Shown here: piece by piece, positions 1-50,479 of the stretch
Position numbering within the stretch: position 1 is the stretch's first letter
Layout: each line of letters starts with the position of its first letter
Assembly: GCF_006345805.1 (NCBI RefSeq)
Contig: NC_043024.1
Location: 15,996,001 to 16,060,000, forward strand
DNA length: 64,000 nt
Direction of reading: 5' to 3'
Origin: Octopus sinensis
Lineage: Eukaryota
The notes under the pieces: model-generated
Databases searched by the model: none
Seen by the model: the letters and a program-made list of their open reading frames with translations, nothing else
What the model was told of the DNA's origin: nothing
Program-made: the position numbers and the translations under genes

Positions 1-7
1 AACAAAG
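1..7 (+). CDS. GCLC: 3' end of a GCLC-like exon (…ITK), copy A; exon starts before the window
   Basis: aacaaag|gtaaatattgattt matches the exon end and donor of the copy B exon at 39511 (rc aacaaag|gtaaatattgattt). Phase 0 fits the next exon. Confidence 0.6.
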
Positions 8-329
8 GTAAATATTGATTTCTCTACAATAAATATTGGACTCTTTCATTTAACTAAAGATATTTATGAACTACAGTTGGCGTTTAATTATATCTCAAAA
101 CATTGCTTTCTTAAGATTGTTCTTTTAAAATTAACATCTTTTTTAATCATGAAACATTTTAAAATATTTACACTATATTTCAACCGGTTTGGCTTCAGCC
201 ACTATCATGTTTCGGGTTTTGGGATGGAAACAGGAAACTGCTTCGTGAGATTAGGGCAAAGCAACTGAGATTTCTATGTCATGTAATAAGGAACAGCGCC
301 TGGAAAATTTATAACCAGTTCTTTTTCTT

Positions 330-1160
330 AAATCATTTACAATCTGCCACATGTCACAGCCCATGTTTCACTGTCATGTAGCATAGCTGTTTGCACACAG
401 GCATCATACAATCTACCTTTCACTCTAAGGTGGGGTCCCATTGTTAATAACAAAACTGGTAGCTCTCTGTACTTTGCCCAGCTTGTTCTTATTCTAGCAA
501 CTATGCTCTCAGAACTTCTTCCACCACTGTTAACTTGATCATTTGGGTAATGGAAGTTATCTACTGCTTCCAAGGATTTTCACAGATATTTGAAGAAGCT
601 TATTTTCTGTACCTTCCGAGTTTTTATTGTACCCACTCATCTGTCACACATAAAGACTACTTTCTCTGTTAATTTTCCTGTAGCACTGCTGCACCTCTTA
701 TGTATCCATAGCTTGCACTGGGTACCCTGTATGAAGTACCTACAAACACATTTTCTACATACGATCAGTGTTAGTGATTTGTCCACTTTTGCTACTTACT
801 AGAACTTTGTTCAATACCTGAAAGTTCTTTAGTTCTTGTAGGGATTCAGCTACAAAAACAAGGTCATCAGCTAGAGAAGCTCCCAAGGGCAGCCAGTCTT
901 AAATTCCACTGTTATGTCCTGGAGGACTATGATAAACAAGAGGAGGCTGAGAACTGATCCTTGGTGAACTCCTACCTGTGCACTAAATTCCTTGCTATGC
1001 TCATTGCTGATTTTCACCTTATCGACATCTCTGCACATGGCAGGTGCAGCTCTCACCAACCACTCATCTATCCCTTGCTTCCACATTAATCACAAGGTAA
1101 GAGAGTGGAGGATCCTATCACTGGCTTTCTCCATATTGCTAAAAGCCAAGTACAGAGGTT
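330..1160 (-). mobile_element. Decayed RTE-clade LINE reverse transcriptase fragment
   Basis: ORF pieces QVGVHQGSVLSLLLFIIVLQ…GCPWELL and RVKGRLYDACVQTAMLHDSETW are typical RTE RT motifs. Confidence 0.85.
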
Positions 1161-1309
1161 TATTTTTGGCTAAATATTTTCCCTACAGTTGTCTTAATAG
1201 TTAATATCACCAGAAAAGGATTAAGTCTGAACAACTCAATATTACACATGACACACTAATGTATTTTATTCTCTCCGTCTTTTTTGTAATAATATATATA
1301 TATATACTA

Positions 1310-1450
1310 TGTCATTGGCCAGTGCTGGTGAGTCATAAAAGGCACCCATTACACTATTGGAGTGGTTGGTGTTAGGAAGTGCATCCAGCTGTAGACACCA
1401 AGCACAATCAGACTAAAGCCTGGTATAGCTCTCTGGCTTACCAGTTCCAG
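1310..1450 (+). mobile_element. Unexpanded 3' UTR fragment of the RTE family that forms the arrays at 14.6-17.0 kb and 51.9-63.8 kb
   Basis: cataaaaggcacccattacactattggagtggttggtgttaggaagtgcatccagc is similar to 63890-63950. Confidence 0.7.
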
Positions 1451-1451
1451 A

Positions 1452-1489
<38 letters not shown>

Positions 1490-1629
1490 TAATCGAAGTG
1501 TGCAATATTATATATCCATTACAGCTGATCGGTTTCACATCAGGAGTTCAAAGGTGCGTTAGGTAACAGTCCAGTTAAGCAACCCTGCGCTCTTTAAAGG
1601 TAGCTGTTATGGAATGTAGAATGATGGCT

Positions 1630-1698
1630 ACCTCTGAAGAGCGTGGGGTTATATAATTCAACTGTTACCTAACACTGTGCGAAACCGATTGGTAAGAT
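1630..1698 (+). ncRNA. Type I hammerhead ribozyme motif (PLE-like)
   Basis: CTGAAGA at 1634-40, stem II GCG…TGC, GAAA at 1681-84, near-palindromic ACCGATTGGT and GUA site at 1692-94. Stem I is short with a mismatch. Confidence 0.7.
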
Positions 1699-2164
1699 CT
1701 GCTGTGGTGGATATATAATATTGTAGACTTTGATTAATATACCCACTGCTGACAGATATATGAGTGCATTTTTTCCTGACTTATGGACTCTTAGACAGCT
1801 TACAGATACACACACACACACATATATATTCAATGTATCATATAATATACCCGAAAAAGAAGAACATTCCAAGGCATAGACGTAATGTATTTTTATGTAG
1901 TTAAGTCTAAGTGCGGTCATAGTGATCAATGGTTTCGCATCAAGCCCTATGGATGGTTCGTCAGACTCTAAAGCCGAAGGCCCATATAACTCTTCAACCC
2001 TGGAAGGCAGGAATCCGTTATGGTCTGTTAGCAAGTAACCGAAGAATAAGCAATACAGGTCGGCGAGGATGAGTTATCTCCTTTAGACCGGTTCATCTGG
2101 GCCAAAATGTGTGTGTGTGTGTGTATTAAAATATCTTCTTACATGTAATTTTTCCTTCTCCAAG

Positions 2165-2246
2165 GTTACTGAAAACTTCCCACCAGCACAAAAACGAGAT
2201 GCCATTACTAAAGAAAAGTTTTACTTCAGGAAAAATGTTCAACAAG
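2165..2246 (+). CDS. GCLC: GCLC-like copy A exon, VTENFPPAQKRDAITKEKFYFRKNVQQ(E)
   Basis: Pyrimidine tract+AG at 2163-64 and GT at 2247; 82 nt (3n+1). Aligns to vertebrate GCLC VDENMKVAQKRDAVLQGMFYFRK. Confidence 0.9.
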
Positions 2247-2609: not shown

Positions 2610-2680
2610 AAGTCGCTGATTGTGAACTAACTGGTGATATTTATACCTTGATGACTCTAAACGAAATCATGAATGGAAAG
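2610..2680 (+). CDS. GCLC: GCLC-like copy A exon, (E)VADCELTGDIYTLMTLNEIMNGK
   Basis: AG at 2608-09 and GT at 2681; 71 nt with compatible phases. Matches GCLC EYTLMSIDTIINGK. Confidence 0.9.
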
Positions 2681-3600: not shown

Positions 3601-4241
3601 ACAGGGACAAGAAAAAAGTCCTAACAACGGATGGCTTCCTAGCCATTGTGCATCTTGATGGCATTCAGATTAAAAACTGTGAAAAGAGAAGAATCATCAT
3701 GGAAGCTGATGAGTTTATTAATCCTCTCTGAACTCTTGTATTGAATTTCCATTCAATAACTTGTAGAGTTGAAATAATTTCCAAGAGATTAGTTAATCTG
3801 AGATTTGATAAGATCAATTACTGTGAGAAGAGGGAAGAGGGTAGAATCTCTAGAAGTGCTTTCTCATAAAAATATTAAAAAACTTTTGTAACCAGCTGTC
3901 CGACCTCTTAAACAATTTCGAAACTTCAGGGAAGAAAACTGAAACTATTTAATTATTTTGCTTCTATTGCCAACAGGATAATTTCCCTTATTTGCTTCCT
4001 CTCATCTACACACATCACTAATTTTCCTTGTCATAATTTTCTGCAATTCATCGTTAGTCTTCTCTCTAGTGTTTTAATGATTCACCACATTTTATGTTAG
4101 AAATCATCATAGTTTCATTAAAAGCGGGGTCAAAGACTGCCATAAATATATTCCAGATTATATAATGAAATTTTCTTTGGTCAACATCTCCAACAGAAAA
4201 ACTCAAACTATTTCCAATCCTTTTGATTCTATTCTCAACAG

Positions 4242-4359
4242 GATGATTTCCCTGGTTTAATTCCTCTCATACACAAATATCTTGATCATGTTGACTACGA
4301 TTCCAGTAAAAGACCTAAAATAATGCAATACCTGAAATTTCTCTCAGACAAAGCTGCAG
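4242..4359 (+). CDS. GCLC: GCLC-like copy A exon, DDFPGLIPLIHKYLDHVDYDSSKRPKIMQYLKFLSDKAA(G)
   Basis: AG at 4240-41 and GTAAG at 4360; 118 nt. Matches GCLC FPGLIPILNSYL…ILNYLKLIKKRASG. Confidence 0.93.
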
Positions 4360-4759
4360 GTAAGATGATTCTCATTTGTTTTCATCAATATTAAACAAAT
4401 GTTATTAGAAACATTCAACCTTAAAACTCATTGCTGAAAGTATTTATTTAAATAATAATTCGACATAGGTTTCCATAATTGATATTTATATAATACTAGC
4501 AGAGTTATCTGGCGTTGCCCGTGTTACATGCAATTGAAGAATTAGACTTTTCTGTTATATTTTCTGTAATTAACTGGAATACCTATGTTTCGAATTTCAT
4601 CAAAATTGAAGATGAGGGTTATGAGGTTTCTATAATCGATATTTATATAATATATATCCATCATTCCATTAGCAATTGAAATCCAAATGTTTAAAATTAA
4701 GGAAAATATCGCGTTTACTACACAAAGAAGATTATCTCCCATGCAATAGAAATGTCCAA

Positions 4760-5440
4760 GCTTGCTTCCCAATCACATGGTTCTAGGTTCAGTCCCACTG
4801 CGTGGCATTTTGAAAGTGTCTTCTATAAACTCGGGTCAACCAAAGCTACGTGAGAGGATTTGGTAGACGGAAACTGAAAGAAGCCCGTCGTATGTGTGTC
4901 TGTGTTTGTCCCCCCACCACTTGACATTCAGTGTTGGTGCGTTTACATCCATGTAACTTATTAGATCGGCAAAAGGACTGATAGAATAAGTGCGAGGCTT
5001 TAAAAAGTGCTAATGTTGTTTGATTCCACAGAAATTCACCAAGGCAGTGCTCCAGCATGGCCGCTGTCAAATGACTGAAGCTAGAAGACAAAACACACAC
5101 AGAGAGATGCATACACATATAGTAAAGACCGTTTTTGGTCGCGAATGACCATTGCATTGCACCTAGAAAGTTCCCATCTGAGGCAACTGTCTGGGCAAGG
5201 TTGTTCATGTAAGACCAGGCATCACCCATGCATACCAGCTTCCCTTCTCCACGTAACCGATGTTATCCAAGGGAAAGGCTAAAGGGGCCGATACAGTTTG
5301 GCACCAGTGACATCGCAGCTCATTTCTGCAGCTGAGTGAACTGGAGCAACGTGAAACAAAAAGAAAACCCAGTCCGGGAATTGAACTAGCATCCCGAATA
5401 TAAGTCCCACACTTAACCACTGTGGTATGCACCTTCACAA
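4760..5440. mobile_element. Two adjacent tRNA-related SINEs in opposite orientation in the last intron of GCLC copy A
   Basis: Family motifs shared with other SINEs in the window. The block is duplicated in inverted form at about 23990-24715. Confidence 0.75.
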
Positions 5441-5516
5441 AAAGTTGTCGACAAACAACCACGTGATTTTATATATACACATATGATTGAAAACGTACGC
5501 ACTCATTAATATTTTA

Positions 5517-5549
<33 letters not shown>

Positions 5550-5848
5550 TACTTTTGCTCTTGTACTTGTTTCAGTCATTTGACTACGTCCATGCTGGAG
5601 CAACACCTTAAAGGGTCGAACAACACCTTAAAGGGTCAAACAACACCTTAAAGCGTCGAACAAATCGACCCCAAGACTTATTCTTTGTAAGCTTCGTAGA
5701 AACAATTATCACTGCTAAAACTATTAGGGCTTTATCTATTTGTACCTCATTTGACGAAGCCAGGATATTGTTACAGAATACACCAAATAATTTCCATCTG
5801 AAATGAAAAACGAATTATTTATTATTCTAATTTATTTTTATCTTACAG

Positions 5849-6015
5849 GAAAGATAATGACAATGGCCCAATGGACAAGACAGTTTGTAAGAAATCATGA
5901 AGATTACAAGAATGATTCTGTTGTCAGTGAGAGAATCGCTTATGATTTTATGATGGAATGTGAAAAGATTGTCAACAGTGAAGAACGATTTCCACAAGCT
6001 TTTATCAGGAGTTAA
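5849..6015 (+). CDS. GCLC: GCLC-like copy A terminal exon, (G)KIMTMAQWTRQFVRNHEDYKNDSVVSERIAYDFMMECEKIVNSEERFPQAFIRS*
   Basis: AG at 5847-48 and TAA at 6013-15. Matches GCLC [26 protein letters not shown]. Confidence 0.93.
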
Positions 6016-7899
6016 GGAAACATTTTAAGAACTTTATCGCATATTTAATTAACTGAGCTACAGAGAACGTTGTCTACATAACCAAACTAATTTACATCAC
6101 ACTAACTAAACAGGATATATATATATAAATGGAATTAAACACAGGTTTTATTCAAATTCTTTTACTTCCGACACATGTTTCAAAGATATCACTTGTATTA
6201 TTCAAAAAACAATCTCTTACAAATTATCTCTTCACATAATATTAACTTGTTAAATATTGGTACATTTACTAATACTAACATTAATTTAGCTAATACCATC
6301 CATCCCCCTAGAAATATTAATAACAATGTTATTGTATTTGAAGTCAATTACAACACAATCAAGTTTGTGTCAAGTAACTCTAAAATTAAAAATCCCATAT
6401 TCCATTGTAAAATTACTAATGGTAATGAAGTATTTTTTTTTATATAAGAAGCACATCTTCTCAGTTATCTAAAAGAATTTCTAATCATTACTATACATTT
6501 AGGGATAGGAATAAACGTAACAGTACAGGGCTTAATAAATTAATTTTGGATCTAAAAGACCACAATAAACAATTTAATTTAGATTGGTTGATTCTTTCAA
6601 TCTCGATACCTTATGACAAGGAATTCTGTCTTTGTAATTCTCAACTATTTTTTATACTTTTTTCTAAAAATCCGCTTGTAAACACGGTTATAGAGCGTGC
6701 ATACCGATGTAAACATTGACTCCAGCATGGCCGCAGTCAAATAACTGAAACAAGCAAAAGAAGACACAAATAAAGGAATATAAATATCATATTTAGATAT
6801 ACATACACACATTCTTACATTTTCTTGTTTCGGTCATTTGACTGCGGTCAAGCTGGACCACTACCTTAAGGGATTTGAACCAAATGAATGGCCCCCAGAG
6901 CTTATTCTCTGTAAGCCTAGTACTTATTACTCTGATATAAGAAATCAATTTCGTTATAGCTGCCACAAAAGGTGTATTTTCTGTCATGAAAAAGTACAAA
7001 AAAATGTCAGCTGGAGGAAGGAGATTGTCAGAGGTTGGCGAGATGCAACGGCATAATTCTGCTTAGCGATGGCATCTGGAAAATGTATAACTGCTGTCAT
7101 TCACAGAAAAATTATTATTTTACCGTGAGAAGAGCGCTGTTGAAGTGTTAAGTGAAATTTGGTAATCAAGGATCGAACCCATGCTATGCCTGCATGAAGC
7201 CACTACAAATACATTGTGGAATAAAAAATTTACCTACTGTCATGGAAAAAGTGTAACAGTAAAAATGCAGAATTATTGGAGTAATGGGCATTCAAAAACA
7301 TATGAATGTATAGAAATGTATGAATGAAGTCTTTAAAGTTTAAGATTCAAATTAAGGAAGTGCAATAATAATGTTTAGCAGTTCAAAACTGTGAGCAATG
7401 AAATGCAGAATTAGGTCGGCTGATCGTGCGAATCAAATGTTGATTGCTTCACTAAAATCTGCAGATGGTATGGGTTACTTCCTTTGGGTTGTTTAAATAT
7501 TAGTAATATATGGTAGATAGAAGGATCCATTGGAAGGGCCCTATTATCGATATTTTCAACAGTCTAAGTATGTCATGAGGTTTCCAGACATGAGTTCTAC
7601 TCACGTGTCAAATAAAGTATGAAAGTGATAATGTCTGCAAAATTAGAAATAGGACACACAAAAAATCAATATTCAAAGTAATCGAACATAAACCATGAAA
7701 TGGGATATTTCCTTTGAGTGTTTAAAAAATAGTGCTATGAGTTATTTCCCTTGGGTGTTTAAAAAATATTTGTTTTATGAGGTAGATATAAAGGTCCCTT
7801 TTTTCATCAATTTTCATTGAAATCAATAAAACGATGTAGGAGGAGTTAGCTAACATATAATCAAATACAGAGATCGTGCCCCTCGTGGCCACAGTCCAC

Positions 7900-8990: not shown

Positions 8991-9037
<47 letters not shown>

Positions 9038-9155: not shown

Positions 9156-9198
<43 letters not shown>

Positions 9199-10179: not shown

Positions 10180-10269
10180 TTTCATTCTACACGTGTTTCG
10201 AAAGGCACAAATTACCAAAATCCGATTGAATAATGGGACCATATTGTGTCTTTCTCTTCAGGAAGAAAA
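10180..10269 (-). ncRNA. Type I hammerhead ribozyme in the inverted repeat of PLE1
   Basis: Reverse complement of 12703-12792. Confidence 0.85.

Positions 10270-17342: not shown

Positions 17343-17345
<3 letters not shown>
14570..17345 (-). mobile_element. 5'-truncated RTE LINE whose 3' UTR is tandemly amplified; ends in a (GAT)n tail
   Basis: RRLRWYGHVM…GRGRPRK…VVKHDLRTLGLT at 17050-17340. The marker ggtatgcacaggtggactgac recurs at about 15121, 15445, 15780, 16128, 16703 and 16973. 62-63-bp modules lie at 14741-14930 and (CAT)n at 14570. Confidence 0.88.
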
Positions 17346-17393
<48 letters not shown>

Positions 17394-17488
17394 CCTGTTT
17401 AGTTAGTGTGATGTAAATTAGTTGGTTATGTAGACAACGTTCTCTGTAGCTCAGTTAATATATGCGATAAAGTTCTTAAAATGTTTCC

Positions 17489-17655
17489 TTAACTCCTGAT
17501 AAAAGCTTGTGGAAATCGTTCTTCACTGTTGACAATCTTTTCACATTCCATCATAAAATCATAAGCGATTCTCTCACTGACAAACAGATCATTCTTGTAA
17601 TCTTCATGATTTCTTACAAACTGTCTTGTCCATTGGGCCATTGTCATTATCTTTC
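17489..17655 (-). CDS. GCLC: GCLC-like copy B terminal exon (…YKNDLFVSERIAYDF…AFIRS*)
   Basis: Reverse complement of 5849-6015, 167 nt. It differs only at gatctgtttgtc versus gattctgttgtc. Confidence 0.92.
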
Positions 17656-17954
17656 CTGTAAGATAAAAATAAATAGAATAATAAATAATTCGTTTTTCAT
17701 TTCAGATGGAAATTATTTGGTGTATTCTGTAACAATATCCTGGCTTCGTCAAATGAGGTACAAATAGATAAAGCCCTAATAGTTTTAGCAGTGATAATTG
17801 TTTCTACGAAGCTTACAAAGAATAAGTCTTGGGGTCGATTTGTTCGACTAAAACCCTTTAAGGTGTTGCTCCAGCATGGACGTAGTCAAATGACTGAAAC
17901 AAGTACAAGAGCAAAAGTAATATATATATATATATATATTTATTATATAGAAGG

Positions 17955-18005
17955 AGCTTCTACAGGACTAGAACTGTTTCATTCAAGAGAAATCTTCAGG
18001 AAGCT
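17955..18005 (-). ncRNA. Type I hammerhead ribozyme at the 3' end of PLE2
   Basis: Reverse complement of 23757-23807. Confidence 0.82.
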
Positions 18006-18239
18006 AGTTAACAAGAATTGTATTGGCATTTATACATTTAGGCAGGTTTATAGGGGTGGTGGTGGGGGACTTTTTGGGGGTAGGCATAGCGCAAAAAAAT
18101 CATACTTGGGGGAGTGGTCAAGGAGTCAGTGGTAAATTAGATAGAAGAATAAACAAAAGAATAAAAAAAGAATAAAAAAATTTAAAAATATATAGAAGAA
18201 TAGAGTTTTAGGTAAATAAGGAAATTCTCACTTATACCT

Positions 18240-18313
18240 ATACACATATGTATACATATATACACACACACACACACACATATATATACATACACACATA
18301 CATACACACACAC

Positions 18314-18359
<46 letters not shown>

Positions 18360-18614
18360 ATATACATACATATATCTACCTATATATATATATATATATA
18401 CATATATATACATATACATACATACACATATACATGCATATACATATACACACTCACATGTATATATACACACACACGACCACACATACACATACACACA
18501 AAAAAATATATACATACACACACATACACATACACACATACACACACATATCCACATACACACATGCACACACAACACACAAGTCCCTATATACTCATAT
18601 ATACATATACACAC

Positions 18615-18645
<31 letters not shown>

Positions 18646-19274
18646 CATACATATGTGTACCTATTCATACCTACACATACACACATATATATACATACAA
18701 ATACAAACCCATTCCCTAATTTTAATTTTTTATCTTCATTTATTACTTTTGTTATCTTTGACCGCTGGTCACAAGCATCTTGGCTAAGACAGCTAGTCCC
18801 TTTTATCTTTCTACTTGAGCACAAGCACTCACTCACGCACGCACACTCATTAGCACGCACACACACTCATTCGTACACTCATACACATACAGGCACGCAC
18901 GCGTTATATTCATACATACATACATCTACATTCATACACGTTTATACACATACGTACGCGTACCTACAGATTCATGTCTACAATCTTAGAAGACTAGTCT
19001 ATACATATACACCAAATATATATACACACATACATATACACCTACATACAAATACATACATACATATATATACACACATATATATATATACACATATACA
19101 CATACACACATATATATATATATATATATACACACATCCGCATACACACATACATACATACACCCATACATACATACATTATACACATATAACACACCCA
19201 CACGTATACATATACATACATATACGCGCATGCATACACATACAAATACATACACAACACATATACATATACAT

Positions 19275-19326
<52 letters not shown>

Positions 19327-19768
19327 CATACATACACATACATACATACATATACATATATACACACACACATACATACACATATACACATACACGCACA
19401 TACACATATACATACGTACCCATACGCACACACACACACGCGCATCCATATATACACATAAGTACACACATGCGTAAAAGTATACAAATATCTATGCTTA
19501 CACATACACACACACACACGCCACTCCTTATGTTCATACTTACATGCGTACTCAAAGAATAAGTAATAAAATATATATACATGCAGTTATTCATACATGC
19601 ATACTCAAAAAATAATAAATAATAAATAATAAATAATAAATATTAAGTATATATACGTGCAGTTACCTATTATACAGACGGATACATACATATAAACTTA
19701 CACACACATATATATATATATATAATATACATATATATACATATAATATATATATATATATATACATA

Positions 19769-19813
<45 letters not shown>

Positions 19814-20721
19814 TACACATATGTACATATACATACACACATACATAACTCTACTTACCTACATATACCTAAACACACGAGCGTACACGTATATGTACAT
19901 ATACACATACACATACACAACAATATACATACATACATATACATACACGCATATATACACACACAGATATATATATACCCATATTATATATATATATATA
20001 TATTATATTATATATATATATCTACACATATACACACATACACACACATATACATACATATACATACACACACATACACACATATATATTAATATTATTA
20101 TTATATATATATATATACACATATAATGTATATAATATACACATACATACATACACATACATATACACACATACACACACACACCATACATATATACACA
20201 TATACACACACAAACATACATATACATACACACCATACATACACATATATACACAATATATATATATATATATATATAATATATATATAATACATATATA
20301 CAGTACATGTGTGCAAACATACATACATACATACTCATACACACTCACACACTACATATACATATAACACACACTTACACACACACATAATATATATATA
20401 TATATTAGATATATATACAGATATATGTATATATACATACATTATATATACATATATATACATACATACATATACATACACACATACACATATGTACACA
20501 TACACACACATATTCACATATATATATATATATATATATACATATATATACACACACATATATATATATACATATATACATACACATATATATATATATA
20601 CACATACACACACACACATATATATATACACACACCTACACATACACACATATATACATATATACATACATATACACACATACACACACACACACATATA
20701 TGTACATACATACACATACAC

Positions 20722-20756
<35 letters not shown>

Positions 20757-20789
20757 CATGCACATACGTATAACTCTACATACCCACAT

Positions 20790-20828
<39 letters not shown>

Positions 20829-21022
20829 ATACACACACATATATATACACATATATATGTGTATATATACACACACATATATATACCCATCTACAATCTG
20901 TATATACACACACATACCTGCACATACACATAACTCTACATACCTACATATACATCGAATACTCGCGTACACTCATAATACACATATATAATATACATAT
21001 ACACATACACATACATATACAC

Positions 21023-21068
<46 letters not shown>

Positions 21069-21150
21069 AATAAATAATATATATATACACACGCACACAT
21101 ATATATACATATATACATATATATATACACACACACACACATACACATAC

Positions 21151-21205
<55 letters not shown>
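18240..21205. repeat. ~3 kb compound (CA)/(TA) low-complexity region inside the PLE2 insertion
   Basis: Seen directly, with unique islands at about 18700-18830 and 19520-19690. Confidence 0.95.
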
Positions 21206-21208
<3 letters not shown>

Positions 21209-23382
21209 ACAATTGAGGGTAAAGTTAATTAGTTATTAATCAATTTCACCAAGTATTCAGTATGTAAAAGGACCATTATTTTTTTGAGTAAACATTGTCT
21301 GAGAGAAAATTTCTTAAGTAGTGGAAAAAGCTAAAAACTTATTTGGCTGCTATTTCTAGAAAGTTCAGTATGTGGCAAAGTAATTTATTTTACTAAGCCC
21401 TAATTATATAATTTTATATACACACATACACATACATACACCCATACATATACACATACATATGCATACACACATATATACATATATACATATACACACC
21501 ACACACACACACACATACATATATATATTTTTTTTACGTACATACACACACACACACATAATACATGCGTATATTCCTACAATACCCATACATTTTATAC
21601 ATATATACGATACACATATACAAGCGTGCACATACAATATGTGAAAGGTCTTAGGAGAAAAGTCGGAGGTGCTAGGGAACGGTGGGATTGGGGGGGTTTG
21701 TGGGTGGGGTGTCATCAATCTGGTTGCCGGGTAGGTTATAGTTCTTGTAGTTTGCATAATTCTTATGCATGCAATTTGGGGAGTGTTCTGAAATTGTTAA
21801 GGAGAGGGCCTTTGGCGAACAAGATCTCTAGGCTCTCCGAAATGCAAAGGTCACAGCAGGTATGGCCTCCTGTGTACGAACGCGCCTTCGTAGTAGTTTC
21901 CACTTTGTCTTGAAGGGGATGGAGTTCCTTTTAAGGTACCAGATGTGGGCGGCGAGGGTTAGTTTGGTTGGATTTATCCGGTCGCCGGAACGAGTGTGTG
22001 GTGTGCGTACCAACGGGTCTTAAAGCTGTTTGACGTCATTCCGATGTAGGATTTTCTTTTATCGTCAGGGCCTGATCTTACCTCGCATGTATATACTAGG
22101 TCCTCTGTAGGCAGTTGTGTTGAGGGGGCAGGTGGTTTTATCAGGCAGTTGCAATGCTATCGGACGTGGGATGGGTCTCAGAAAAAGTAGATATGTTAAG
22201 TTTATTCACTTGTTGTTGGCTAGGTTCCTGGCTAGATTGGCGTGGTAGAGTAGGAGAGTCTAATAGTGTTCTTATTTAGGATAGTGTAGTACTTATGTTG
22301 GGTGGGGAAGTGTTCTGTAGGAGAGTGAAGAAGATTTTAGCTACAGGTGTTAGCGACCTCACGGTTGAAGGGGGGGGTTGTACCAGCTAATGTGTCTTCG
22401 TCTATTTTTCTGGGTTGGCGTGGGGCTATACTAGTATAGGTAATCTTATCTTTAAGCCACTGCGGGCCAGGGCTCGTTGTAATAGGGGGCTGCGGCCTTA
22501 AAGATATCTTCCGTGGCGGACAGGCTAGAAATTCTTATTGAGACACTTTTTACTAGGTTATCTAATATATTTTTGGGGTGGTTGGAATTAATATCTATAT
22601 ATCTAAGGGATTCATTTGGTTTGTGGTACGGGTAATAAAGTGAGGTTTTTAAGTCGAGGGTGACGTCAAGGAAGTTAGCTTTGGTTAAGTTGGATTCTAA
22701 GGTAATCCTAAGGCCTAAGGCCTAAGTAATCCGTGGTCCTGGGGTTTATTTTGTGGAGGGCGAAAAGGCCGTCATCGCGGTAAAGACCACCGGAGAGGCC
22801 TGTGAATAGGGTTTTCAGCCTATGGAGGATGAAAAGGCCCACTAGGTCACTTATTTCAGCCGAGTCGCTAGCACCCATGCTGACGTCGAAGGGGGTCACA
22901 GATTTTTTGTTGATCCAGTGGGATCCGTCGTGGAAAAGAAAAGTCTTACATGCGTGGAGGATCACATCTTGCTCAGCCTCGGTGATGGTGGAGGACCTCC
23001 TGGCGAAGTTAATCGCGTCGATCAGCAAGCTCTCCGATATGGAGGCGTAGTAATCCTCGATATCCAGTTGTAGGAATCGGGTGTTGCTTTTGTCAGGTAA
23101 ATCCCGGAACCAGGTTATTGCCTCGGAGGTCCTATTCCAGAGTGGAAGGGGGATGAAGCTTCACGCATTTTGGTAAAATCCTGTCCAGGATCTTCTTGCT
23201 GACGGATCCGATGTCAGACTTGGTTGGGTTAATCAGTCGGACCGACGGTTTATTTCGAAATGGTCTTTGTGGTCTTTCAGGGTGAAGTGTGGGGACTTCA
23301 CCCTCAGGGGTTCAGTTCGGTCATCTTTAAGGGAGGTGGCAATCTCTTTCCCGGCTAAGTTGGTTTCAGTTAGCACTGTGTC

Positions 23383-23445
<63 letters not shown>

Positions 23446-23756
23446 GATATATGGGTGTGTGTGTGTATGTATGAGTGTATGTATATATATGTGTGGTGTG
23501 TGTGTGTATATATGTATACATATGTGTATAGGTATAAGTGAGAATTTCCTTATTTACCTAAAACTCTATTCTTCTATATATTTTTTAATTTTTTTTTTTA
23601 ATTCTTTTTTTATTCTTCTATCTAATTTACCACTGACTCCTTGACCACTCCCCCAAGTATGATTTTTTTGCGCTATGCCTACCCCCAAAAAGTCCCCCAC
23701 CACCACCCCTATAAACCTGCCTAAATGTATAAATGCCAATACAATTCTTGTTAACT

Positions 23757-23807
23757 AGCTTCCTGAAGATTTCTCTTGAATGAAACAGTTCTAGTCCTGT
23801 AGAAGCT
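23757..23807 (+). ncRNA. Type I hammerhead ribozyme in the inverted repeat of PLE2
   Basis: agcttc-CTGAAGA-T·TTC(TCTT)GAA·T-GAAA-CAG(TTCTAGTC)CTG-TA-gaagct: 6-bp stem I, 4-bp stem III and GUA site at 23799-801. Confidence 0.82.
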
Positions 23808-23890
23808 CCTTCTATATAATAAATTAATTTTACTCCGCTATGTATTGAGTACCTTATTTACTGTGGTTAACCCCGAATCAACCCGGGACC

Positions 23891-23934
<44 letters not shown>

Positions 23935-24952
23935 AAAAATTAATGAGTGCGTGCGTTTTCAATCATATGTGTGTTTGTGTGTATAAAACCCCGTGGTTGT
24001 TTGTCGACAACTTTTTGTGAAGGTGCATACCACAGTGGTTAAGTGTGGGACTTATATTCGGGATGCTAGTTCAATTCCCGGACTGGGCTTTCTTTTTGTT
24101 TCACGTTGCTCCAGTTCCCTCAGCTGCAGAAATGAGTTGCGATGTCACTGGTGCCAAACTGTATCGGCCCCTTTAGCCTTTCCCTTGGATAACATCGGTG
24201 ACGTGGAGAAGGGAAGCTGGTATGCATGGGTGACGCCTGGTCTTACATGAACAACCTTGCCCAGACAGTTGCCTCAGACGGGAACTTTCTAGGTGCAATG
24301 CAATGGTCATTCGCGACCAAAAACGGTCTTTACTATATGTGTATGCGTCTCTCTGTGTGTGTATGTGTGTGTGTGTTTTGTCTTCTAGCTTCAGTCATTT
24401 GACAGCGGCCATGCTGGAGCACTACCTTGGTGAATTTCTGTGGAATCAAACAACATTAGCACTTTTTAAAGCCTCGCACTTATTCTATCAGTCCTTTTGC
24501 CGATCTAATAAGTTACATGGATGTAAACGCACCAACACTGGATGTCAAGTGGTGGGGGGACAAACACAGACACACATACGACGGGCTTCTTTTAGTTTCC
24601 GTCTACCAAATCCTCTCACGTAGCTTTGGTTGACCCGAGTTTATAGAAAACACTTTCAAAATGCCACGCAGTGGGACTGAACCTAGAACCATGTGATTGG
24701 GAAGCAAGCTAGGACATTTCTATTGCATGGGAGATAATCTTCTTTGTGTAGTAAACGCGATATTTTCCTTAATTTTAAACATTTGGATTTTAATTGTTAA
24801 TGGAATGATGGACATATATTATATAAATATCGATTATGGAAACCTATGTCGAATTTTTATTTAAATAAATACTTTCAACAATGAGTTTTAAGGTTGAATG
24901 TTTCTAATAACATTTGTTTAATATTGATGAAAACAAATGAGAATCGTCTTAC

Positions 24953-25070
24953 CTGCAGCTTTGTCTGAGAGAAATTTCAGGTATTGCATTATTTTAGGTC
25001 TTTTACTGGAATCGTAGTCAACATGATCAAGATATTTGTGTATGAGAGGAATTAAACCAGGGAAATCATC
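24953..25070 (-). CDS. GCLC: GCLC-like copy B exon, identical to copy A 4242-4359
   Basis: Exact 118-nt reverse complement of 4242-4359, with intact AG/GT. Confidence 0.92.
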
Positions 25071-26215
25071 CTGTTGAGAATAGAATCAAAAGGATTGGAA
25101 ATAGTTGAGTTTTTTGTTGGAGATGTTGACCAAAAAAATTTCATTATATAATCTGGAATATATTTATGGCAGTCTTTGACCCTGCTTTTAACGAAACTAT
25201 GATGATTTCTACATAAAATGTGGTGAATCATTAAAACACTAGAGAGAAGACTAACGATGAATTGCAGAAAATTATGACGAGGAAAATTAGTGATGTGTGT
25301 AGATGAGAGGAAGCAAATAAGGGAAATTATCCTGTTGGCAATAGAAGCAAAATAATCAAAAATAGTTTCAGTTTTCTGATGGAGATATTGACCAAATGGT
25401 TATAAAATTTGCTGATATTTTTTGTGAAGGAAATATCTGAAAAACTGAAGCAGAAATAAGAAAAATTTCATGATGTTAATTTAGGATATTTTTATGACAT
25501 TCTTTGACATCTGTCCCTTTTAATAAAATTATGATGATTTCTAACATACAGACAAAGCCATAAAGCTTGGGGTATCACAGTGAGATGGGTGTTAGAAAGA
25601 GAGAGAAAGAAATAGTATGGTAGAAGGGACAAACAAATCTCTTTGGAACCATTTCATCTCTACAATTGAACCATTCTGCTTAATCCATGATTTCATGGAA
25701 GAGTTTAATAACCACAATTGTCATGCAGATTCTTCATTCCTCAGAGTAATTGGAACTTATAGAACAATCTAGAATCTTTTCTATAGACTATTTCTTATTG
25801 AAAAAATCATTACCAATTTCTTTGGATTAAGAATTTTGTGTGGACATTGATGTGTTTCACAAGTTCCTGAGGTATCCAGGGCATATTCTATTGTCACCAT
25901 ATGTCGATCAGTGCTTTATATACACACACACAAAGACACACACACTCACCCCATCCTAACCTCTAAAGCCAATCCCCCAAATCATTGATGCTTGAAGGAG
26001 AGACAAAAAGGATAAATTCTTTTCAGTTCCACATTACTCCTCCTTTCCCCCACCCAAACACACCTACAGTGTCCCTTGAAATAAATAATATTCTTTTACG
26101 TTAACACAACATGGTGGACAGGTCAGTTTTAGCTTCCCTACTATTATAATGTAAACCTTTTTGAACTCATAATATTCTGTGCGTGTATACCAATATTCCA
26201 CTGAACTTTTTAATA

Positions 26216-30694: not shown

Positions 30695-30765
30695 CTTTCC
30701 ATTCATGATTTCATTTAAAGTCATCAGGGAGTAAATTTCATGGGTTACCTCACAACTGGTAAATT
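30695..30765 (-). CDS. GCLC: GCLC-like copy B exon, (E)FTSCEVTHEIYSLMTLNEIMNGK
   Basis: AG/GTAAG boundaries; 71 nt. 17 differences from copy A exon 2610-2680. Confidence 0.92.
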
Positions 30766-33625: not shown

Positions 33626-33703
33626 CATTTTGAACTTCTCTGAAGTGAAACTTTTCTGTATTAGTGGAATCCCGCTTTTGTGCTGATGTGAAGTTTTCAT
33701 CAC
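33626..33703 (-). CDS. GCLC: GCLC-like copy B exon, DENFTSAQKRDSTNTEKFHFREVQN; 78 nt, apparent 1-nt frameshift
   Basis: AG/GTAAG boundaries and paralogy to 2165-2246. Length is 3n where the flanking phases require 3n+1. Confidence 0.8.
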
Positions 33704-36152: not shown

Positions 36153-36156
<4 letters not shown>

Positions 36157-36161
36157 GTGAA

Positions 36162-39510: not shown

Positions 39511-39615
39511 CTTTGTTATTGGGATCAAAAGGTTCAATTTGAAGGTAACAATGGCTCGGGTAAGAAGGACCATAAATACAACAAGGGCAGCATTTTCAAA
39601 GTCGGTCAATTGAAG
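39511..39615 (-). CDS. GCLC: GCLC-like copy B exon, LQLTDFENAALVVFMVLLTRAIVTFKLNLLIPITK
   Basis: AG/GT boundaries; 105 nt. Matches GCLC [35 protein letters not shown]. Confidence 0.95.
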
Positions 39616-42596: not shown

Positions 42597-42646
<50 letters not shown>

Positions 42647-43037: not shown

Positions 43038-43124
43038 CTCCATTGTCCTGAATTCTATTTTCCATCCAGATTTCTCATCAGGAAGTTTCAGTTTTAGGCT
43101 TTGCCAATTACTTCCAATGACGGC
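43038..43124 (-). CDS. GCLC: GCLC-like copy B exon, AVIGSNWQSLKLKLPDEKSGWKIEFRTME
   Basis: AG/GT boundaries; 87 nt. Matches GCLC NIQSTNWQTMRFKPPP…GWRVEFRPME. Confidence 0.92.
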
Positions 43125-47429: not shown

Positions 47430-47810
47430 TAGCAGTATCGCCCGGCGTTGCTCAGGTTTGTAAGGGAAATAACTATAAAGCATTTTTAGAGAGTTATAGC
47501 CAAAAAAATAGCAAAAAAATGGAAAAAAATGATGGTAAATTTTTTTGAGAGTTAAAAAAGGTCGAGTTGCGTCCCCTAGACAATCTGTGGTTTGTGTTTC
47601 TGATTCTCAACCCCATGTCGAATTTATCGATTTTTTTCAGAACTGGGGGAACTTTTCAAAATTTTCGCTGCGTTAGTTTTGAATTATGACATTGGGCTAT
47701 GTGTGTGTCAAGTTTCATCAGAATCGGTTGAAAGCCGTGGTCAGGGTGAGGGTACAACCAAACAGACACACAGAAACACACACAGACAAACTGCCGTTTA
47801 TATATAGAGA
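47430..47810 (+). mobile_element. Non-autonomous interspersed element, possibly Helitron/Helentron-like
   Basis: Starts ACTAGCAGTATCGCCCGGCGTTGC and ends …tatatagaga. A similar start occurs at 4495. Class is inference. Confidence 0.45.
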
Positions 47811-47848
47811 GATTATCAAAAGGATATATTTTACAAATATATATTTAC

Positions 47849-47961
47849 CTGAATGTGATCTGTATCTTTCATTATGTCTTGATCGATCTTCTCTTTGTAT
47901 AAAGCGATTGGGTCTCTGACCAGGAGTTGGGCAACGTATTTGGACATCATTTCATCAACAC
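47849..47961 (-). CDS. GCLC: GCLC-like copy B exon, (G)VDEMMSKYVAQLLVRDPIALYKEKIDQDIMKDTDHIQ
   Basis: AG/GT boundaries; 113 nt. Matches GCLC [29 protein letters not shown]…DHFE. Confidence 0.9.
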
Positions 47962-48062
47962 CTGATTAATTAACAAATAATTTAATCAGTTTTAATAATT
48001 TATAAAACTGTTGCATACTTTTACAAGGAAACTGATTAACACAGACAGACACTGGCAAGCAT

Positions 48063-48103
<41 letters not shown>

Positions 48104-48282
48104 TACATACATACATACATACATAGGCAGCCACGCACATACACATATGCACACACATGCACACGCACATACACGCACACATCTGCACATATACACTGAC
48201 ACGTGCACATACACACGCATGTATGTACACACACACACACACACAAACACAAACACATATATATTTATGTATGTATATATGC

Positions 48283-48640
48283 GCTGGCTCGGTCCTGTAC
48301 ATCGCATGCCAGACGGAAGAATCCCAAAAGATCTCTTGTCTAGGGAATTGTCCAGCGGCACAAGAGCACGAGGACGTCTGCAAGAGAGATATGATGTCAA
48401 TAGATTTGGACAACCTGAGATAGGAGGAGGTCACAAGTATTCGCCCACGCTGGAGTCAAATACTGCGAAACGGGATGAAGCGAGGGGAAGAAAAGCAGGA
48501 ACTTGCCATCAAAGGAAACTGCACTCGACGGAAGGAAAAACCAGTAGCACCGGCAGAGAGTTCCTTCAAATGCAGTTGCTGTATGCGTGACTGCCACTCG
48601 CTTGTGGGCCTGTACTGCCACAAGAGATGCTGTACCACCT
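48283..48640 (+). mobile_element. RTE-BovB-like LINE C-terminal fragment
   Basis: RWLGPVHRMPDGRIPKDLL…RGR and terminal CxxCxRxCHS…H motif. Confidence 0.82.
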
Positions 48641-50340
48641 TCAGCAGCTGACACAATTTCTTCGGGTGCAGATCCATGGCTTCGCAGGACCGACAACTGC
48701 ATACTACAAACGCACACACAAACACACATACACGCACACGTGCAGGCACATGCACACACACACACACGTACACACACACACACACACGCACACGTACACA
48801 CACACACACGCACACACACACGCATGATCTTTTATTCCAGTCTCCATCATTAGGTTTGTAGCCAGAATAAGTTAGATTTACCACAAGAGTTACGTCCCCT
48901 CTACAGAGTTACCTACCTTCGTAAAACTGTAGTTGTAATGATCATGTTAAAACATCTACGCTACTATACACACGGATGCGCAATGGCTCAGTGGTTAGGG
49001 CAGCGGACTCATGGTCATAGAATCTAGGTTTCGATTCCTAGACCGGGTGTTGTGAGTGTATATTGAGCGAAAACACCTAAAGCTCCACGTAGCTCCGGCA
49101 GGGGATGGTGGTGAACCCTGCTGTATTCTTCCCCTACAACTTTCTCTCTTCCTTCCAGTTTCTGTTGTATCAGTATTTCAAAGGCCAGCCTTGTCACATT
49201 TTGGGTCACACTGAATCTCTCCGAGAACTACATTAAGGGTACACGTGTCTGTGGAGTGCTCAGCCATTTATACCTTAATTTCACGAGCAGGCTGTACCAT
49301 TGATCGGATCAACTGGAACCCACTATAGACGCACGATCTACTGTCTATATGCATACGTACGTACGTACGTACATACATACATACATACATGCATACAATC
49401 ATATATACGTACATACATACATACATGCATGCATACATGCATACAATCATATATACGTACATGCATGCATACATGCATGCATACATACATACATACATAC
49501 ATACATACATACATACATACATGCATGCATACAATCATATATACGTACATACATGCATACATGCATGCATACATACATACATGCATGCATGCATGCATGC
49601 ATACATACATACATACAATCATTCACACATACAATCATACACACACACATACATACATACAAACAAACAAACAAACAAACAAAGACCCACTTCAGTCACG
49701 AATGACCATGGTATTGCACCTAGAAAGTTACTCTCTGAGGCACAAATCTGGACATGGTTTTTCTTTTTTATGGAAGACCAGCAGTCGTCAATGCATACCA
49801 GCCTCCTCTCTCCACACCACTGATGTTATCCAAGGAAAAGGCAAAGGGGCTGATACAGCTTGGCACCAGTGACATCACAACAGCTGAGTGAACTGGAGCA
49901 ACATGAAATAAAGTGTCTTGCTCAAGAACACAACACACAGCCCAGTCCGGGATTCGAACTCACTACTTCAAGATTGCAGCCTGATGCTCTAACCACTGAG
50001 CCATGTGCCTTCAAATGCAGAGAAACTGTTTTTAACTTCACTAAATCATTTATTATTTAGTGCTAAAATCTTCATCACTGACCAGGTTGCAAATAACACA
50101 ATGAAAATTTTGATACCAAGTAAGTAAATGGGTGAATGAAGTTAATAGTTTCTGTGAATGGTTAACAAAAGTCATGGATACTGTAACTGTTTAATGAATG
50201 TAATTATGATTGAATATTTACAACACAGTAGCAAAGTAAAAGGAAATGTGTTAATTAATTCTGTCAACTGGTCAATGATAATATTTTTATATAAAATGAA
50301 TCAAAAATTATTTTTATGTTTTTAGAGAATTTCTAAATAC

Positions 50341-50479
50341 CTTCAGCTTTCAATAATTCATACTGCTCAGGATCATAAGTGAAATCATAATCATTATAAA
50401 ATTGGTCACTCACAGAAAGGTAACTGCTTACTGTATCATAACGGGATTTCTTCATCAAAATGTTACCATTTGTCAAAGG
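50341..50479 (-). CDS. GCLC: GCLC-like copy B exon, PLTNGNILMKKSRYDTVSSYLSVSDQFYNDYDFTYDPEQYELLKAE(G)
   Basis: AG/GT boundaries; 139 nt. Matches GCLC PLKNNNYRISKSRYDSIDSYLS…YNDIDL…YEQLLQEG. Confidence 0.92.

What the first reader, a model, noticed from the sequence alone, without database searches (positions are those of the whole stretch)
1..50479. Tail-to-tail pair of divergent GCLC-like paralogues hidden in repeat DNA
Seen: twelve GT-AG exons with compatible phases (one exception) form two convergent GCLC-like genes, with stop codons 11.5 kb apart. Established: exon boundaries match my recollection of vertebrate GCLC, and GCLC is usually single-copy in animals. Inference: a lineage-specific duplication of the glutathione-synthesis enzyme.
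Basis: partly seen in the sequence, partly recalled or inferred. Interest (0 to 1): 0.7.

Follow-up and report, generated by a model that had tools for sequence, protein, structure and literature searches.

The report
Convergent octopus GCLC gene pair
The window holds the 3' parts of two real, tail-to-tail copies of the glutathione-synthesis gene GCLC from an octopus; the same pair is already annotated in Octopus bimaculoides, the two 3' ends are kept alike by gene conversion, and one copy here carries a frameshift.

Summary
Twelve GT-AG exons, plus a 7-nt exon tail at position 1, form two convergent GCLC genes (Pfam GCS, E 1e-93 and 2e-43). Their stop codons lie 11,474 nt apart. All seven intron positions and phases match a mammalian GCLC.

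The window comes from an octopod. The + gene is collinear with O. bimaculoides XP_052833098.1 (618 aa), which has a convergent 601-aa GCS neighbour. The - gene is collinear with O. vulgaris CAI9741797.1 (597 aa). The duplication therefore predates these species and is already annotated, though I found no paper on it.

The octopus copies form one clade (100% bootstrap) on a long stem beside cuttlefish GCLC. Known catalytic residues are kept, and dN/dS is 0.2-0.35.

Two details are new:
- A roughly 2.2-kb 3' tract (the last two exons) is 93-98% identical between the inverted copies, closer than each is to its orthologue (dS 0.02 against 0.55 in the exons just upstream). This indicates gene conversion.
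- The - copy has a 1-nt deletion at the start of exon 33703-33626 that leads to a premature stop. It has also lost an invariant Ser, and at least 12 kb of 66-bp satellite lies upstream. It is either a young pseudogene or an assembly error.

This is an ordinary gene-family finding of modest interest.

The parts
1..7 (+). PLUS gene: last 7 nt (AACAAAG, ...T K) of the exon before the first complete one, followed by the donor GTAAAT. The rest of the gene lies upstream of the window.
   Evidence: window 1-64 aligns with O. bimaculoides L004 31854-31916, the end of exon ...KLNFLVPLTK|gtaaat. One search shows collinearity.
2165..2246 (+). PLUS exon (82 nt, phase 0 to 1), VTENFPPAQKRDAITKEKFYFRKNVQQ
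   Evidence: 94% DNA identity to the O. bimaculoides orthologue for this exon plus the next.
2610..2680 (+). PLUS exon (71 nt, phase 1 to 0), EVADCELTGDIYTLMTLNEIMNGK
4242..4359 (+). PLUS penultimate exon (118 nt, phase 0 to 1), DDFPGLIPLIHKYLDHVDYDSSKRPKIMQYLKFLSDKAA
5849..6015 (+). PLUS last coding exon, ending in TAA at 6013-6015
50341..50479 (-). MINUS exon 1 of those in the window (139 nt, phase 0 to 1), PLTNGN...LLKAE. It carries the Tyr equivalent to yeast Gcl Tyr362.
   Evidence: residue mapping
47849..47961 (-). MINUS exon 2 (113 nt, phase 1 to 0)
43038..43124 (-). MINUS exon 3 (87 nt), AVIGSNWQSLKLKLPDEKSGWKIEFRTME. It holds the equivalents of yeast W445, K451, E470 and R472.
39511..39615 (-). 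MINUS exon 4 (105 nt, phase 0 to 0), LQLTDFENAALVV...
33626..33703 (-). MINUS exon 5 (78 nt). A 1-nt deletion (GGTTGA to GGTGA) right after the acceptor shifts the frame, and literal splicing gives a stop 7 codons into the next exon. There is also a 3-nt deletion whose one-residue gap is also seen in the O. bimaculoides protein XP_014785336.1.
30695..30765 (-). MINUS exon 6 (71 nt, phase 1 to 0), EFTSCEVTHEIYSLMTLNEIMNGK
24953..25070 (-). MINUS exon 7 (118 nt). Its protein is identical to the PLUS counterpart.
17489..17655 (-). MINUS last coding exon, TAA at 17491-17489. A compensated -1/+1 indel pair turns the conserved ...NDSVV... into ...NDLFV..., which removes an invariant Ser.
3933..6130 (+). 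PLUS arm of the gene-conversion tract: the last two exons, the intron between them and 115 nt of 3' flank. It ends in a (TA)n run.
23900..25377 (-). MINUS arm of the conversion tract, first part. 95.0-97.5% identical to PLUS 3933-5549.
17378..17943 (-). MINUS arm of the conversion tract, second part. 92.7% identical to PLUS 5526-6130, and 98.8% over the last exon with 60 nt upstream and 100 nt downstream.
17944..23899 (.). About 6 kb of extra DNA in the last intron of MINUS that is absent from PLUS. It is largely (ATAC)n and (AT)n.
51799..63874 (.). 66-bp satellite (183 copies, 96% matches) filling the DNA upstream of the first MINUS exon in the window. No N-terminal GCLC exon occurs between 50480 and 64000.

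Best explanation
The window is an octopod genomic locus carrying the 3' portions of two neighbouring, convergently transcribed genes for the catalytic subunit of glutamate-cysteine ligase (GCLC, the first enzyme of glutathione synthesis). Both belong to an octopus-specific, fast-evolving multi-copy GCLC clade.

The clade arose by duplication before this species split from O. bimaculoides and O. vulgaris. It has kept the ancestral intron positions and the known catalytic residues, and has evolved under purifying selection.

Because the two genes lie tail to tail, their 3' ends form an inverted repeat. A tract of about 2.2 kb (the last two exons, the intron between them and the start of the 3' flank) has been homogenised by gene conversion since speciation.

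In this genome the MINUS copy carries a single-base deletion that truncates the reading frame. It has also lost an invariant serine, and a satellite of at least 12 kb lies upstream of its first exon in the window. It is therefore most likely a recently disabled copy, at roughly even odds against a sequencing error. The PLUS copy looks intact over the four exons visible.

Shown here: gene identity, exon structure, orthology, clade, conversion tract and the frameshift. Inferred: that the intact members still make gamma-glutamylcysteine, and that the MINUS copy is dead.
For: Identity:
- Pfam GCS hits at E 1e-93 and 2e-43.
- The full-length orthologue P0222 aligns with yeast Gcl (PDB 3IG5), residues 5-648, at E 2e-84.
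- All seven intron positions and phases match kangaroo-rat GCLC.

Orthology and conservation of the pair:
- O. bimaculoides L004 holds the 618-aa gene on the + strand and a convergent gene encoding a 601-aa GCS protein.
- Window PLUS is collinear with L004 at 85-93% DNA identity.
- Window MINUS is 93% identical in protein to XP_014785336.1 and collinear with the O. vulgaris P0230 gene.

Clade:
- NJ tree gives 100% bootstrap and a stem of 0.457, sister to cuttlefish GCLC at 69%.
- An exhaustive search shows one representative at 80% identity, then a gap down to 49%.

Constraint:
- dN/dS is 0.35 between orthologues and 0.20 between paralogues over the first four exons.
- The octopus proteins keep 90-100% of the 50 columns that are invariant in 21 canonical GCLCs.
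- Equivalents of yeast D49, E50, E52, E96 and E103 are kept in P0222; W445, K451, E470, R472 and Y362 are kept in window MINUS.

Gene conversion:
- PLUS and MINUS are 97.9-98.8% identical around the last two exons, against 88.6-92.1% to the orthologue. In the two exons just upstream they are 78.5% identical, against 94.1% between PLUS and its orthologue.
- dS is 0.023 in the tract against 0.55 upstream.
- The tract borders are mapped.

Damage to MINUS:
- The 1-nt deletion is absent from four homologous sequences.
- Literal splicing gives a premature stop.
- Ser to Leu at an invariant column occurs only in this copy.
- The orthologous intron upstream is about 2.4 kb in O. vulgaris, but at least 13.5 kb with satellite here.
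Against: - The MINUS copy has only one frame-breaking lesion. All 16 splice sites are intact and there is no in-frame stop in the homologous frame, so the deletion could be an assembly error in a TT dinucleotide.
- The N-terminal exons of both genes lie outside the window, so intactness of either whole gene is unknown.
- No expression data were available.
- Tyr362 (glutamate alpha-carboxylate contact in yeast Gcl) is Phe in most octopus members, Arg449 is Lys in all, and the metazoan Cys aligned with human Cys553 is Pro. Unchanged catalytic function is therefore not assured.
- dN/dS values rest on 48-146 codons.
Confidence: 0.8

Rival explanations
1. Both copies are working genes and the frameshift in the MINUS copy is an assembly or consensus error. 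The locus would then be a pair of expressed GCLC paralogues, as annotated in O. bimaculoides.
For: There is a single 1-nt deletion in a TT dinucleotide. All splice sites are intact and there are no other stops. The O. bimaculoides neighbour is annotated as a 601-aa protein and the O. vulgaris orthologue as 597 aa.
Against: The same copy also carries a compensated indel pair that replaces an invariant Ser. A lineage-specific satellite of at least 12 kb lies in the upstream intron. Other family members are clearly decaying, for example the frameshift in O. vulgaris L001.
Confidence: 0.4
2. The pair is an assembly artefact: a falsely inverted duplicate or an un-collapsed haplotype of a single GCLC gene.
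For: The 3' 2.2 kb is 93-98% identical in inverted orientation, which is what a mis-join could look like.
Against: The exons upstream of the tract differ at dS 0.55 and by 21.5% of nucleotides. Each copy has a different collinear orthologue. The convergent pair exists in an independent chromosome-scale assembly of another species.
Confidence: 0.02
3. The octopus clade has been neofunctionalised. It no longer serves, or no longer only serves, glutathione synthesis. It acts instead as a ligase with altered amino-acid specificity or GCLM-independent regulation, while a separate canonical GCLC does the housekeeping job.
For: The stem branch is very long, at 0.457. Arg449 is Lys in all members, Tyr362 is Phe in most, and the Cys aligned with human Cys553 is Pro. 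There are multiple copies with turnover.
Against: All metal ligands and the key Arg, Lys and Trp residues are kept. 90-100% of universally invariant columns are retained. No canonical octopus GCLC was seen, although the searches that could have shown one appear blind to proteins longer than about 580 aa (against 58, 59).
Confidence: 0.2
4. Both copies in the window are dead relics embedded in repeats.
For: The surroundings are repeat-rich. The MINUS copy is frameshifted. Partial 5-exon copies occur elsewhere in octopus genomes.
Against: The PLUS copy is open, with correct splice sites in all four exons, and has dN/dS 0.35 against its O. bimaculoides orthologue, which is annotated full-length.
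Confidence: 0.05

Closest known systems
O. bimaculoides gene pair on CM046627.1 (10.60-10.65 Mb): XP_052833098.1 (618 aa, 'glutamate--cysteine ligase catalytic subunit') and its convergent neighbour encoding a 601-aa GCS protein. Older partial models are XP_014785340.1 and XP_014785336.1.
   Same: The tail-to-tail arrangement is the same. Window PLUS is collinear with the 618-aa gene (85-93% DNA identity, 91% protein). Window MINUS is 93% identical to XP_014785336.1 and shares its one-codon deletion.
   Different: It is a different species (orthologue dS about 0.12). Introns are larger here and the spacer is not alignable. MINUS is frameshifted here but annotated as coding there. The 66-bp satellite is absent from the part of the O. 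bimaculoides locus I could read.
O. vulgaris CAI9741797.1 (597 aa) on OX597840.1 at 13.38-13.47 Mb
   Same: It is the collinear orthologue of window MINUS (81-94% identity in exons and flanking introns), and its exon-5 sequence is almost the same apart from the two deletions.
   Different: It lacks both the 1-nt and the 3-nt deletions. Its next exon resembles the PLUS type, so it is a mosaic. Its upstream neighbour is a further GCS gene in tandem orientation.
Canonical eukaryotic GCLC / Gsh1 (human GCLC; yeast Gcl, PDB 3IG5, 3IG8, 3LVV, 3LVW)
   Same: Pfam GCS domain, intron positions, Mg2+ ligands, and the Arg472, Lys451 and Trp445 equivalents.
   Different: Only 42-54% identity to canonical animal GCLCs. 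The clade is multi-copy, sits on a long stem branch, has R449K in all members and Y362F in most, and has Pro at the position of human Cys553 (the role of that Cys is recalled from memory, not tested).
Inverted-repeat (palindrome-arm) gene pairs homogenised by gene conversion
   Same: Inverted orientation; paralogue identity exceeds orthologue identity within a sharply bounded tract.
   Different: The tract is short (about 2.2 kb), covers only the 3' ends, is separated by an 11.5-kb spacer, and is interrupted in one arm by about 6 kb of microsatellite-rich DNA.

Membership tests
Eukaryotic glutamate-cysteine ligase catalytic subunit (GCLC/Gsh1, Pfam PF03074 GCS) | Sequence match to the GCS profile above the curated threshold | tested here: met
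   314.9 bits (MINUS, profile positions 83-372) and 149.5 bits (PLUS, 235-372) against a cut-off of 25.
Eukaryotic glutamate-cysteine ligase catalytic subunit (GCLC/Gsh1, Pfam PF03074 GCS) | Gene structure shared with animal GCLC (intron positions and phases) | tested here: met
   Seven of seven introns fall at the same protein positions and phases (1,0,0,0,1,0,1) as in Dipodomys ordii GCLC, locus L007.
Eukaryotic glutamate-cysteine ligase catalytic subunit (GCLC/Gsh1, Pfam PF03074 GCS) | C-terminal-half active-site residues (yeast Tyr362, Trp445, Lys451, Glu470, Arg472) | tested here: met
   All five are present in the conceptual MINUS protein (KSRY..., SNWQSLKLK, GWKIEFR). Residue list from PMC5613772 Table 3, mapping, alignment. 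The PLUS part in the window lies 3' of these residues.
Eukaryotic glutamate-cysteine ligase catalytic subunit (GCLC/Gsh1, Pfam PF03074 GCS) | N-terminal region with Mg2+-binding residues (yeast Asp49, Glu50, Glu52, Glu96, Glu103) | tested here: inconclusive
   The exons lie outside the window; no hit occurs in 50480-64000. In the O. bimaculoides orthologue P0222 all five are conserved.
Eukaryotic glutamate-cysteine ligase catalytic subunit (GCLC/Gsh1, Pfam PF03074 GCS) | Uninterrupted reading frame across the exons | tested here: not met
   This is met for the four PLUS exons. It is not met for MINUS, where the 1-nt deletion at 33701-33703 gives a stop 7 codons into exon 30765-30695.
Eukaryotic glutamate-cysteine ligase catalytic subunit (GCLC/Gsh1, Pfam PF03074 GCS) | ATP-dependent gamma-glutamylcysteine synthesis | not testable with these tools
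   Requires an enzyme assay or complementation.
Eukaryotic glutamate-cysteine ligase catalytic subunit (GCLC/Gsh1, Pfam PF03074 GCS) | Metazoan Cys used for the disulfide with the modifier subunit (human Cys553; role recalled from memory; not defining for the wider family) | tested here: not met
   The aligned position is Pro in all octopus copies (DSSKRPKIM against DVDTRCSIL). It is also not Cys in Capsaspora.
Unprocessed (duplicated) pseudogene - MINUS copy only | Frame-disrupting lesion absent from orthologues | tested here: met
   Sequencing error is not excluded.
Unprocessed (duplicated) pseudogene - MINUS copy only | Multiple independent lesions, lost splice sites or neutral dN/dS | tested here: inconclusive
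   Splice sites are all intact. There is one extra radical change at an invariant Ser. In the converted tract dN/dS is 0.53, based on only 4 differences.
Unprocessed (duplicated) pseudogene - MINUS copy only | No productive transcript | not testable with these tools
   No RNA data for this species were available.
Inverted paralogues under gene conversion | Within-genome paralogue identity exceeds between-species orthologue identity in a bounded tract, and the reverse holds outside it | tested here: met
   97.9-98.8% against 88.6-92.1% inside the tract; 78.5% against 94.1% outside. dS 0.023 against 0.55. Borders at 3933 and 6130.

The most novel reading that the evidence does not exclude
Octopods have turned the normally single-copy, rate-limiting glutathione enzyme into a fast-evolving, clustered multigene family that undergoes birth, death and gene conversion. 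Its substrate pocket and regulation would be altered: Tyr362 to Phe in most members, Arg449 to Lys in all, and the Cys used for the modifier-subunit disulfide replaced by Pro. The family may be the only GCLC genes octopods have, or a set of ligases with a new gamma-glutamyl product or modifier-independent control.
Probability: 0.2. Interest if true: 0.6.

Novelty: new member of a known kind. Interest (0 to 1): 0.33.

Why it matters
GCLC is the rate-limiting enzyme of glutathione synthesis and is usually a single essential gene in animals. A clade-specific family of several rapidly diverging copies offers a natural experiment on how such an enzyme tolerates duplication, divergence near the substrate pocket and loss of copies, and cephalopod redox and thiol chemistry is unusual.

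For annotation, the practical points are these. The two 3' ends are nearly identical inverted repeats, so reads and transcripts will cross-map. One copy may be a pseudogene in this species. Older octopus protein models of about 400 aa are truncated artefacts of full-length genes of about 600 aa.

None of this changes a general principle. It is a well-behaved gene-family expansion that automated annotation already records.

Tried and rejected
- Species identification failed. The window is not O. bimaculoides (PLUS is 91% identical to P0222) and not O. vulgaris or O. sinensis (loci L001, L002, L003, L005, L006 are 72-94% identical). The one-codon deletion shared with O. bimaculoides hints at a closer tie to that lineage.
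- N-terminal truncation was considered, because three old O. bimaculoides models are about 400 aa. I rejected it: newer models are 618, 537 and 597 aa and align with yeast Gcl from residue 5.
- Whether octopods also keep a canonical GCLC could not be settled. None appeared, but those searches returned no protein longer than 578 aa and missed P0222 and P0230, so the absence is uninformative. Clustering at 50% identity hides it.
- A search with the PLUS peptide returned only three partial paralogues.
- The look-up of encoding contigs found nothing for P0001 or P0020.
- The paper by DOI for the yeast Gcl structure was not held. I took the residue list from PMC5613772 instead.
- Three literature searches found nothing on octopus or cephalopod GCLC duplication.
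- Pfam found nothing in eight repeat or intergenic ORFs, and ARAGORN found no tRNA.
- Alternative AG or GT sites that could rescue the MINUS frame were looked for by eye around 33703 and 39511. None exist.
- An early impression that many invariant residues are lost was corrected. Against 21 diverse canonical GCLCs, only one universally invariant column (R449) is changed in all copies.

Full report
**1. What is in the sequence**

A tBLASTn probe with GCLC, repeated with database proteins, hits only two sets of collinear segments. One set is on the + strand at 2.1-6.0 kb. The other is on the - strand from 50.5 kb down to 17.5 kb.

Reading the flanks and splicing the pieces gives the following exons.
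- PLUS: four complete exons at 2165-2246, 2610-2680, 4242-4359 and 5849-6015.
- MINUS: eight exons at 50479-50341, 47961-47849, 43124-43038, 39615-39511, 33703-33626, 30765-30695, 25070-24953 and 17655-17489.
- The window also begins with the last 7 nt of the previous PLUS exon and its donor.

Every exon has an AG acceptor and, except the last ones, a GT donor. The stop codons (6013-6015 and 17491-17489) are 11,474 nt apart.

The concatenated peptides match Pfam GCS (PF03074) at E 1.2e-93 and 2.1e-43. The seven intron positions and phases are the same as in kangaroo-rat GCLC.

**2. Whose genome, and are the two genes real paralogues?**

The best database relatives are all from Octopus.

Old O. 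bimaculoides models of about 400 aa suggested an N-terminally truncated family. The cluster listing shows instead that current models are 618, 537 and 439 aa. The 618-aa protein aligns with yeast Gcl from residue 5 to 648.

The locus of that protein (L004, O. bimaculoides CM046627.1) carries the gene on one strand and a convergent gene for a 601-aa GCS protein on the other. Window PLUS is collinear with the 3' end of the 618-aa gene at 85-93% identity through introns.

Window MINUS is 93% identical in protein to the old model XP_014785336.1. It is also collinear, introns included, with the O. vulgaris gene for CAI9741797.1 (597 aa).

So the window is the orthologous locus of a third, unidentified octopod. 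The pair is old and conserved, and an assembly artefact is excluded.

**3. Shape of the family**

- A neighbour-joining tree on 292 columns places all octopus copies in one clade (100% bootstrap). The stem is 0.457 substitutions per site, the longest internal branch in the tree, and the clade sits beside cuttlefish GCLC at 69% support.
- An exhaustive HMMER scan of 1.84 billion cluster representatives finds one representative for this clade (80% identity). Nothing else appears until ordinary GCLCs at 48-49%.
- Each octopus genome examined has several loci:
  - the convergent pair in O. bimaculoides, plus XP_052834018.1 elsewhere in that genome;
  - a tandem pair on O. vulgaris OX597840.1;
  - five-exon partial copies in O. 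vulgaris and O. sinensis, one near a chromosome-record end and frameshifted.
- I found no paper that mentions this expansion.

**4. Is it still an enzyme?**

I took substrate- and metal-binding residues of yeast Gcl from Table 3 of PMC5613772 and mapped them with the alignment.
- Asp49, Glu50, Glu52, Glu96 and Glu103 are conserved in the O. bimaculoides orthologue.
- Trp445, Lys451, Glu470 and Arg472 are conserved in the window's MINUS exon 43124-43038.
- Tyr362 is Tyr in window MINUS but Phe in the other octopus proteins.

Of the 50 columns invariant in 21 diverse canonical GCLCs, the octopus proteins keep 90-100%. Only Arg449-to-Lys is changed in all of them.

dN/dS is 0.35 between PLUS and its orthologue (143 codons). 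It is 0.20 between MINUS and the O. bimaculoides PLUS-type gene over the first four exons (146 codons).

The simplest reading is that intact members are working glutamate-cysteine ligases, perhaps with modified substrate handling or regulation. This is inference.

**5. Gene conversion of the 3' ends**

Self-comparison shows that PLUS 3933-6130 matches MINUS 25377-23900 and 17943-17378 at 92.7-97.5%. By contrast, the exon at 2165-2246 matches its MINUS partner at only 75%.

| Region | PLUS vs MINUS (within window) | PLUS vs O. bimaculoides orthologue |
|---|---|---|
| Last two exons with flanks | 97.9% and 98.8% | 88.6% and 92.1% |
| Two exons just upstream | 78.5% | 94.1% |

Synonymous divergence tells the same story:
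- 0.023 in the tract;
- 0.55 just upstream of the tract;
- 0.12 between orthologues.

The tail-to-tail arrangement makes the 3' ends an inverted repeat, and a tract of about 2.2 kb has been homogenised since speciation. It ends in a (TA)n run 115 nt past the stop. In the MINUS arm it is interrupted by about 6 kb of mainly (ATAC)n and (AT)n.

**6. State of the MINUS copy**

An alignment of exon 5 with four homologues shows GGTTGA in all of them and GGTGA in window MINUS. Spliced literally, the frame runs into a stop seven codons into the next exon. No alternative AG or GT restores the frame.

Two further features point the same way.
- The last exon has a -1/+1 indel pair that changes the invariant ...DS... 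to ...DL....
- The DNA upstream of the first MINUS exon is 1.3 kb of unique sequence followed by 12 kb of a 66-bp satellite. No GCLC exon occurs up to the window end. The corresponding intron is about 2.4 kb in O. vulgaris, and the satellite is absent from all six related octopus loci.

Against decay, all splice sites are intact and there is only one frame-breaking lesion. I put pseudogene against sequencing error at roughly even odds.

**7. Comparison with the known, and verdict**

The genes are members of the GCLC family by profile, gene structure and active-site residues. Full membership of the window's MINUS copy as a functional gene fails on the reading-frame test.

The pair is already annotated by automated pipelines in O. 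bimaculoides, so this is a new member of a known kind. The modestly interesting points are:
- the octopod-specific, fast-evolving multi-copy state of a usually single-copy enzyme;
- the localised concerted evolution of the inverted 3' ends;
- the possible recent death of one copy.

Whether octopods keep a separate canonical GCLC could not be settled here. The word-indexed searches returned no protein above 578 aa and missed known 597- and 618-aa members, so their silence is uninformative.

Interest is about 0.33.

Noticed in passing
window 51799-63874 (and 63875-64000): A 66-bp satellite with 183 copies and 96% matches. GC is 0.53 against about 0.36 elsewhere. It ends in a SINE-like tail (…GCACCCACTACACTCTCGGAGTGGTTGGCATTAG…CCAGTCCTCAGTCAAA). 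It is absent from the six related octopus loci fetched.
   Followed up: partly
window 14738-16533 (arrays with 63-, 174- and 348-bp periods), extending to about 17344: A diverged relative of the same satellite, about 80% identical to the reverse complement of the 66-mer, sits just 3' of the MINUS gene in the opposite orientation. Window 16460-17344 is 94% identical to O. vulgaris L005 1-889.
   Followed up: partly
window 49940-50008 (-), inside the repeat 49691-50013; other copies at 5122-5363, 24095-24333 and 36154-36498: A weak Rfam tRNA match (31 bits against a gathering score of 29) lies inside a dispersed repeat. It is probably the head of a tRNA-derived SINE. ARAGORN calls no tRNA.
   Followed up: partly
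window 10233-11111 and 11192-11791 (+): Two long ORFs (292 and 199 aa) lie in the spacer between the genes, in a stretch of higher GC (0.44). They have no Pfam match. They may be a decayed mobile element or chance ORFs.
   Followed up: partly
L004 31604-31681 and 31779-31859 (O. bimaculoides): The exon encoding LQLTDFENAALVVFMVLLTR... is partly duplicated in tandem in the O. bimaculoides assembly. The old model XP_014785336.1 also repeats this peptide.
   Followed up: no
L001 (O. vulgaris OX597822.1, first 23 kb of the record), L002/L003 (O. sinensis), L005 (O. vulgaris OX597841.1): L001, L002 and L003 carry partial GCLC copies with only the last five exons, compact introns and no upstream exons within 10 kb. 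In L005 only the last two exons were found. L001 is near a chromosome-record end and is frameshifted in its last exon. L002 and L003 are 96% identical to each other.
   Followed up: partly
L006 1-5784 and 10001-72156 (O. vulgaris OX597840.1): The orthologue of window MINUS has another GCS gene (543 aa) 4 kb upstream in the same orientation. Its exon 6 looks like the PLUS type, which suggests further gene conversion within the cluster.
   Followed up: partly
cluster listing: Several GCLC entries per species also appear in a spider (Larinioides sclopetarius, five entries on two contigs) and in Mytilus galloprovincialis (VDI33070.1 and VDI33071.1 on one 77-kb contig). GCLC duplication may not be unique to octopods. 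Isoforms or haplotigs were not excluded.
   Followed up: no
tool behaviour: The word-indexed protein search returned no hit longer than 578 aa and missed close relatives (P0222, P0230, and P0001). Negative results from it should not be read as absence.
   Followed up: partly
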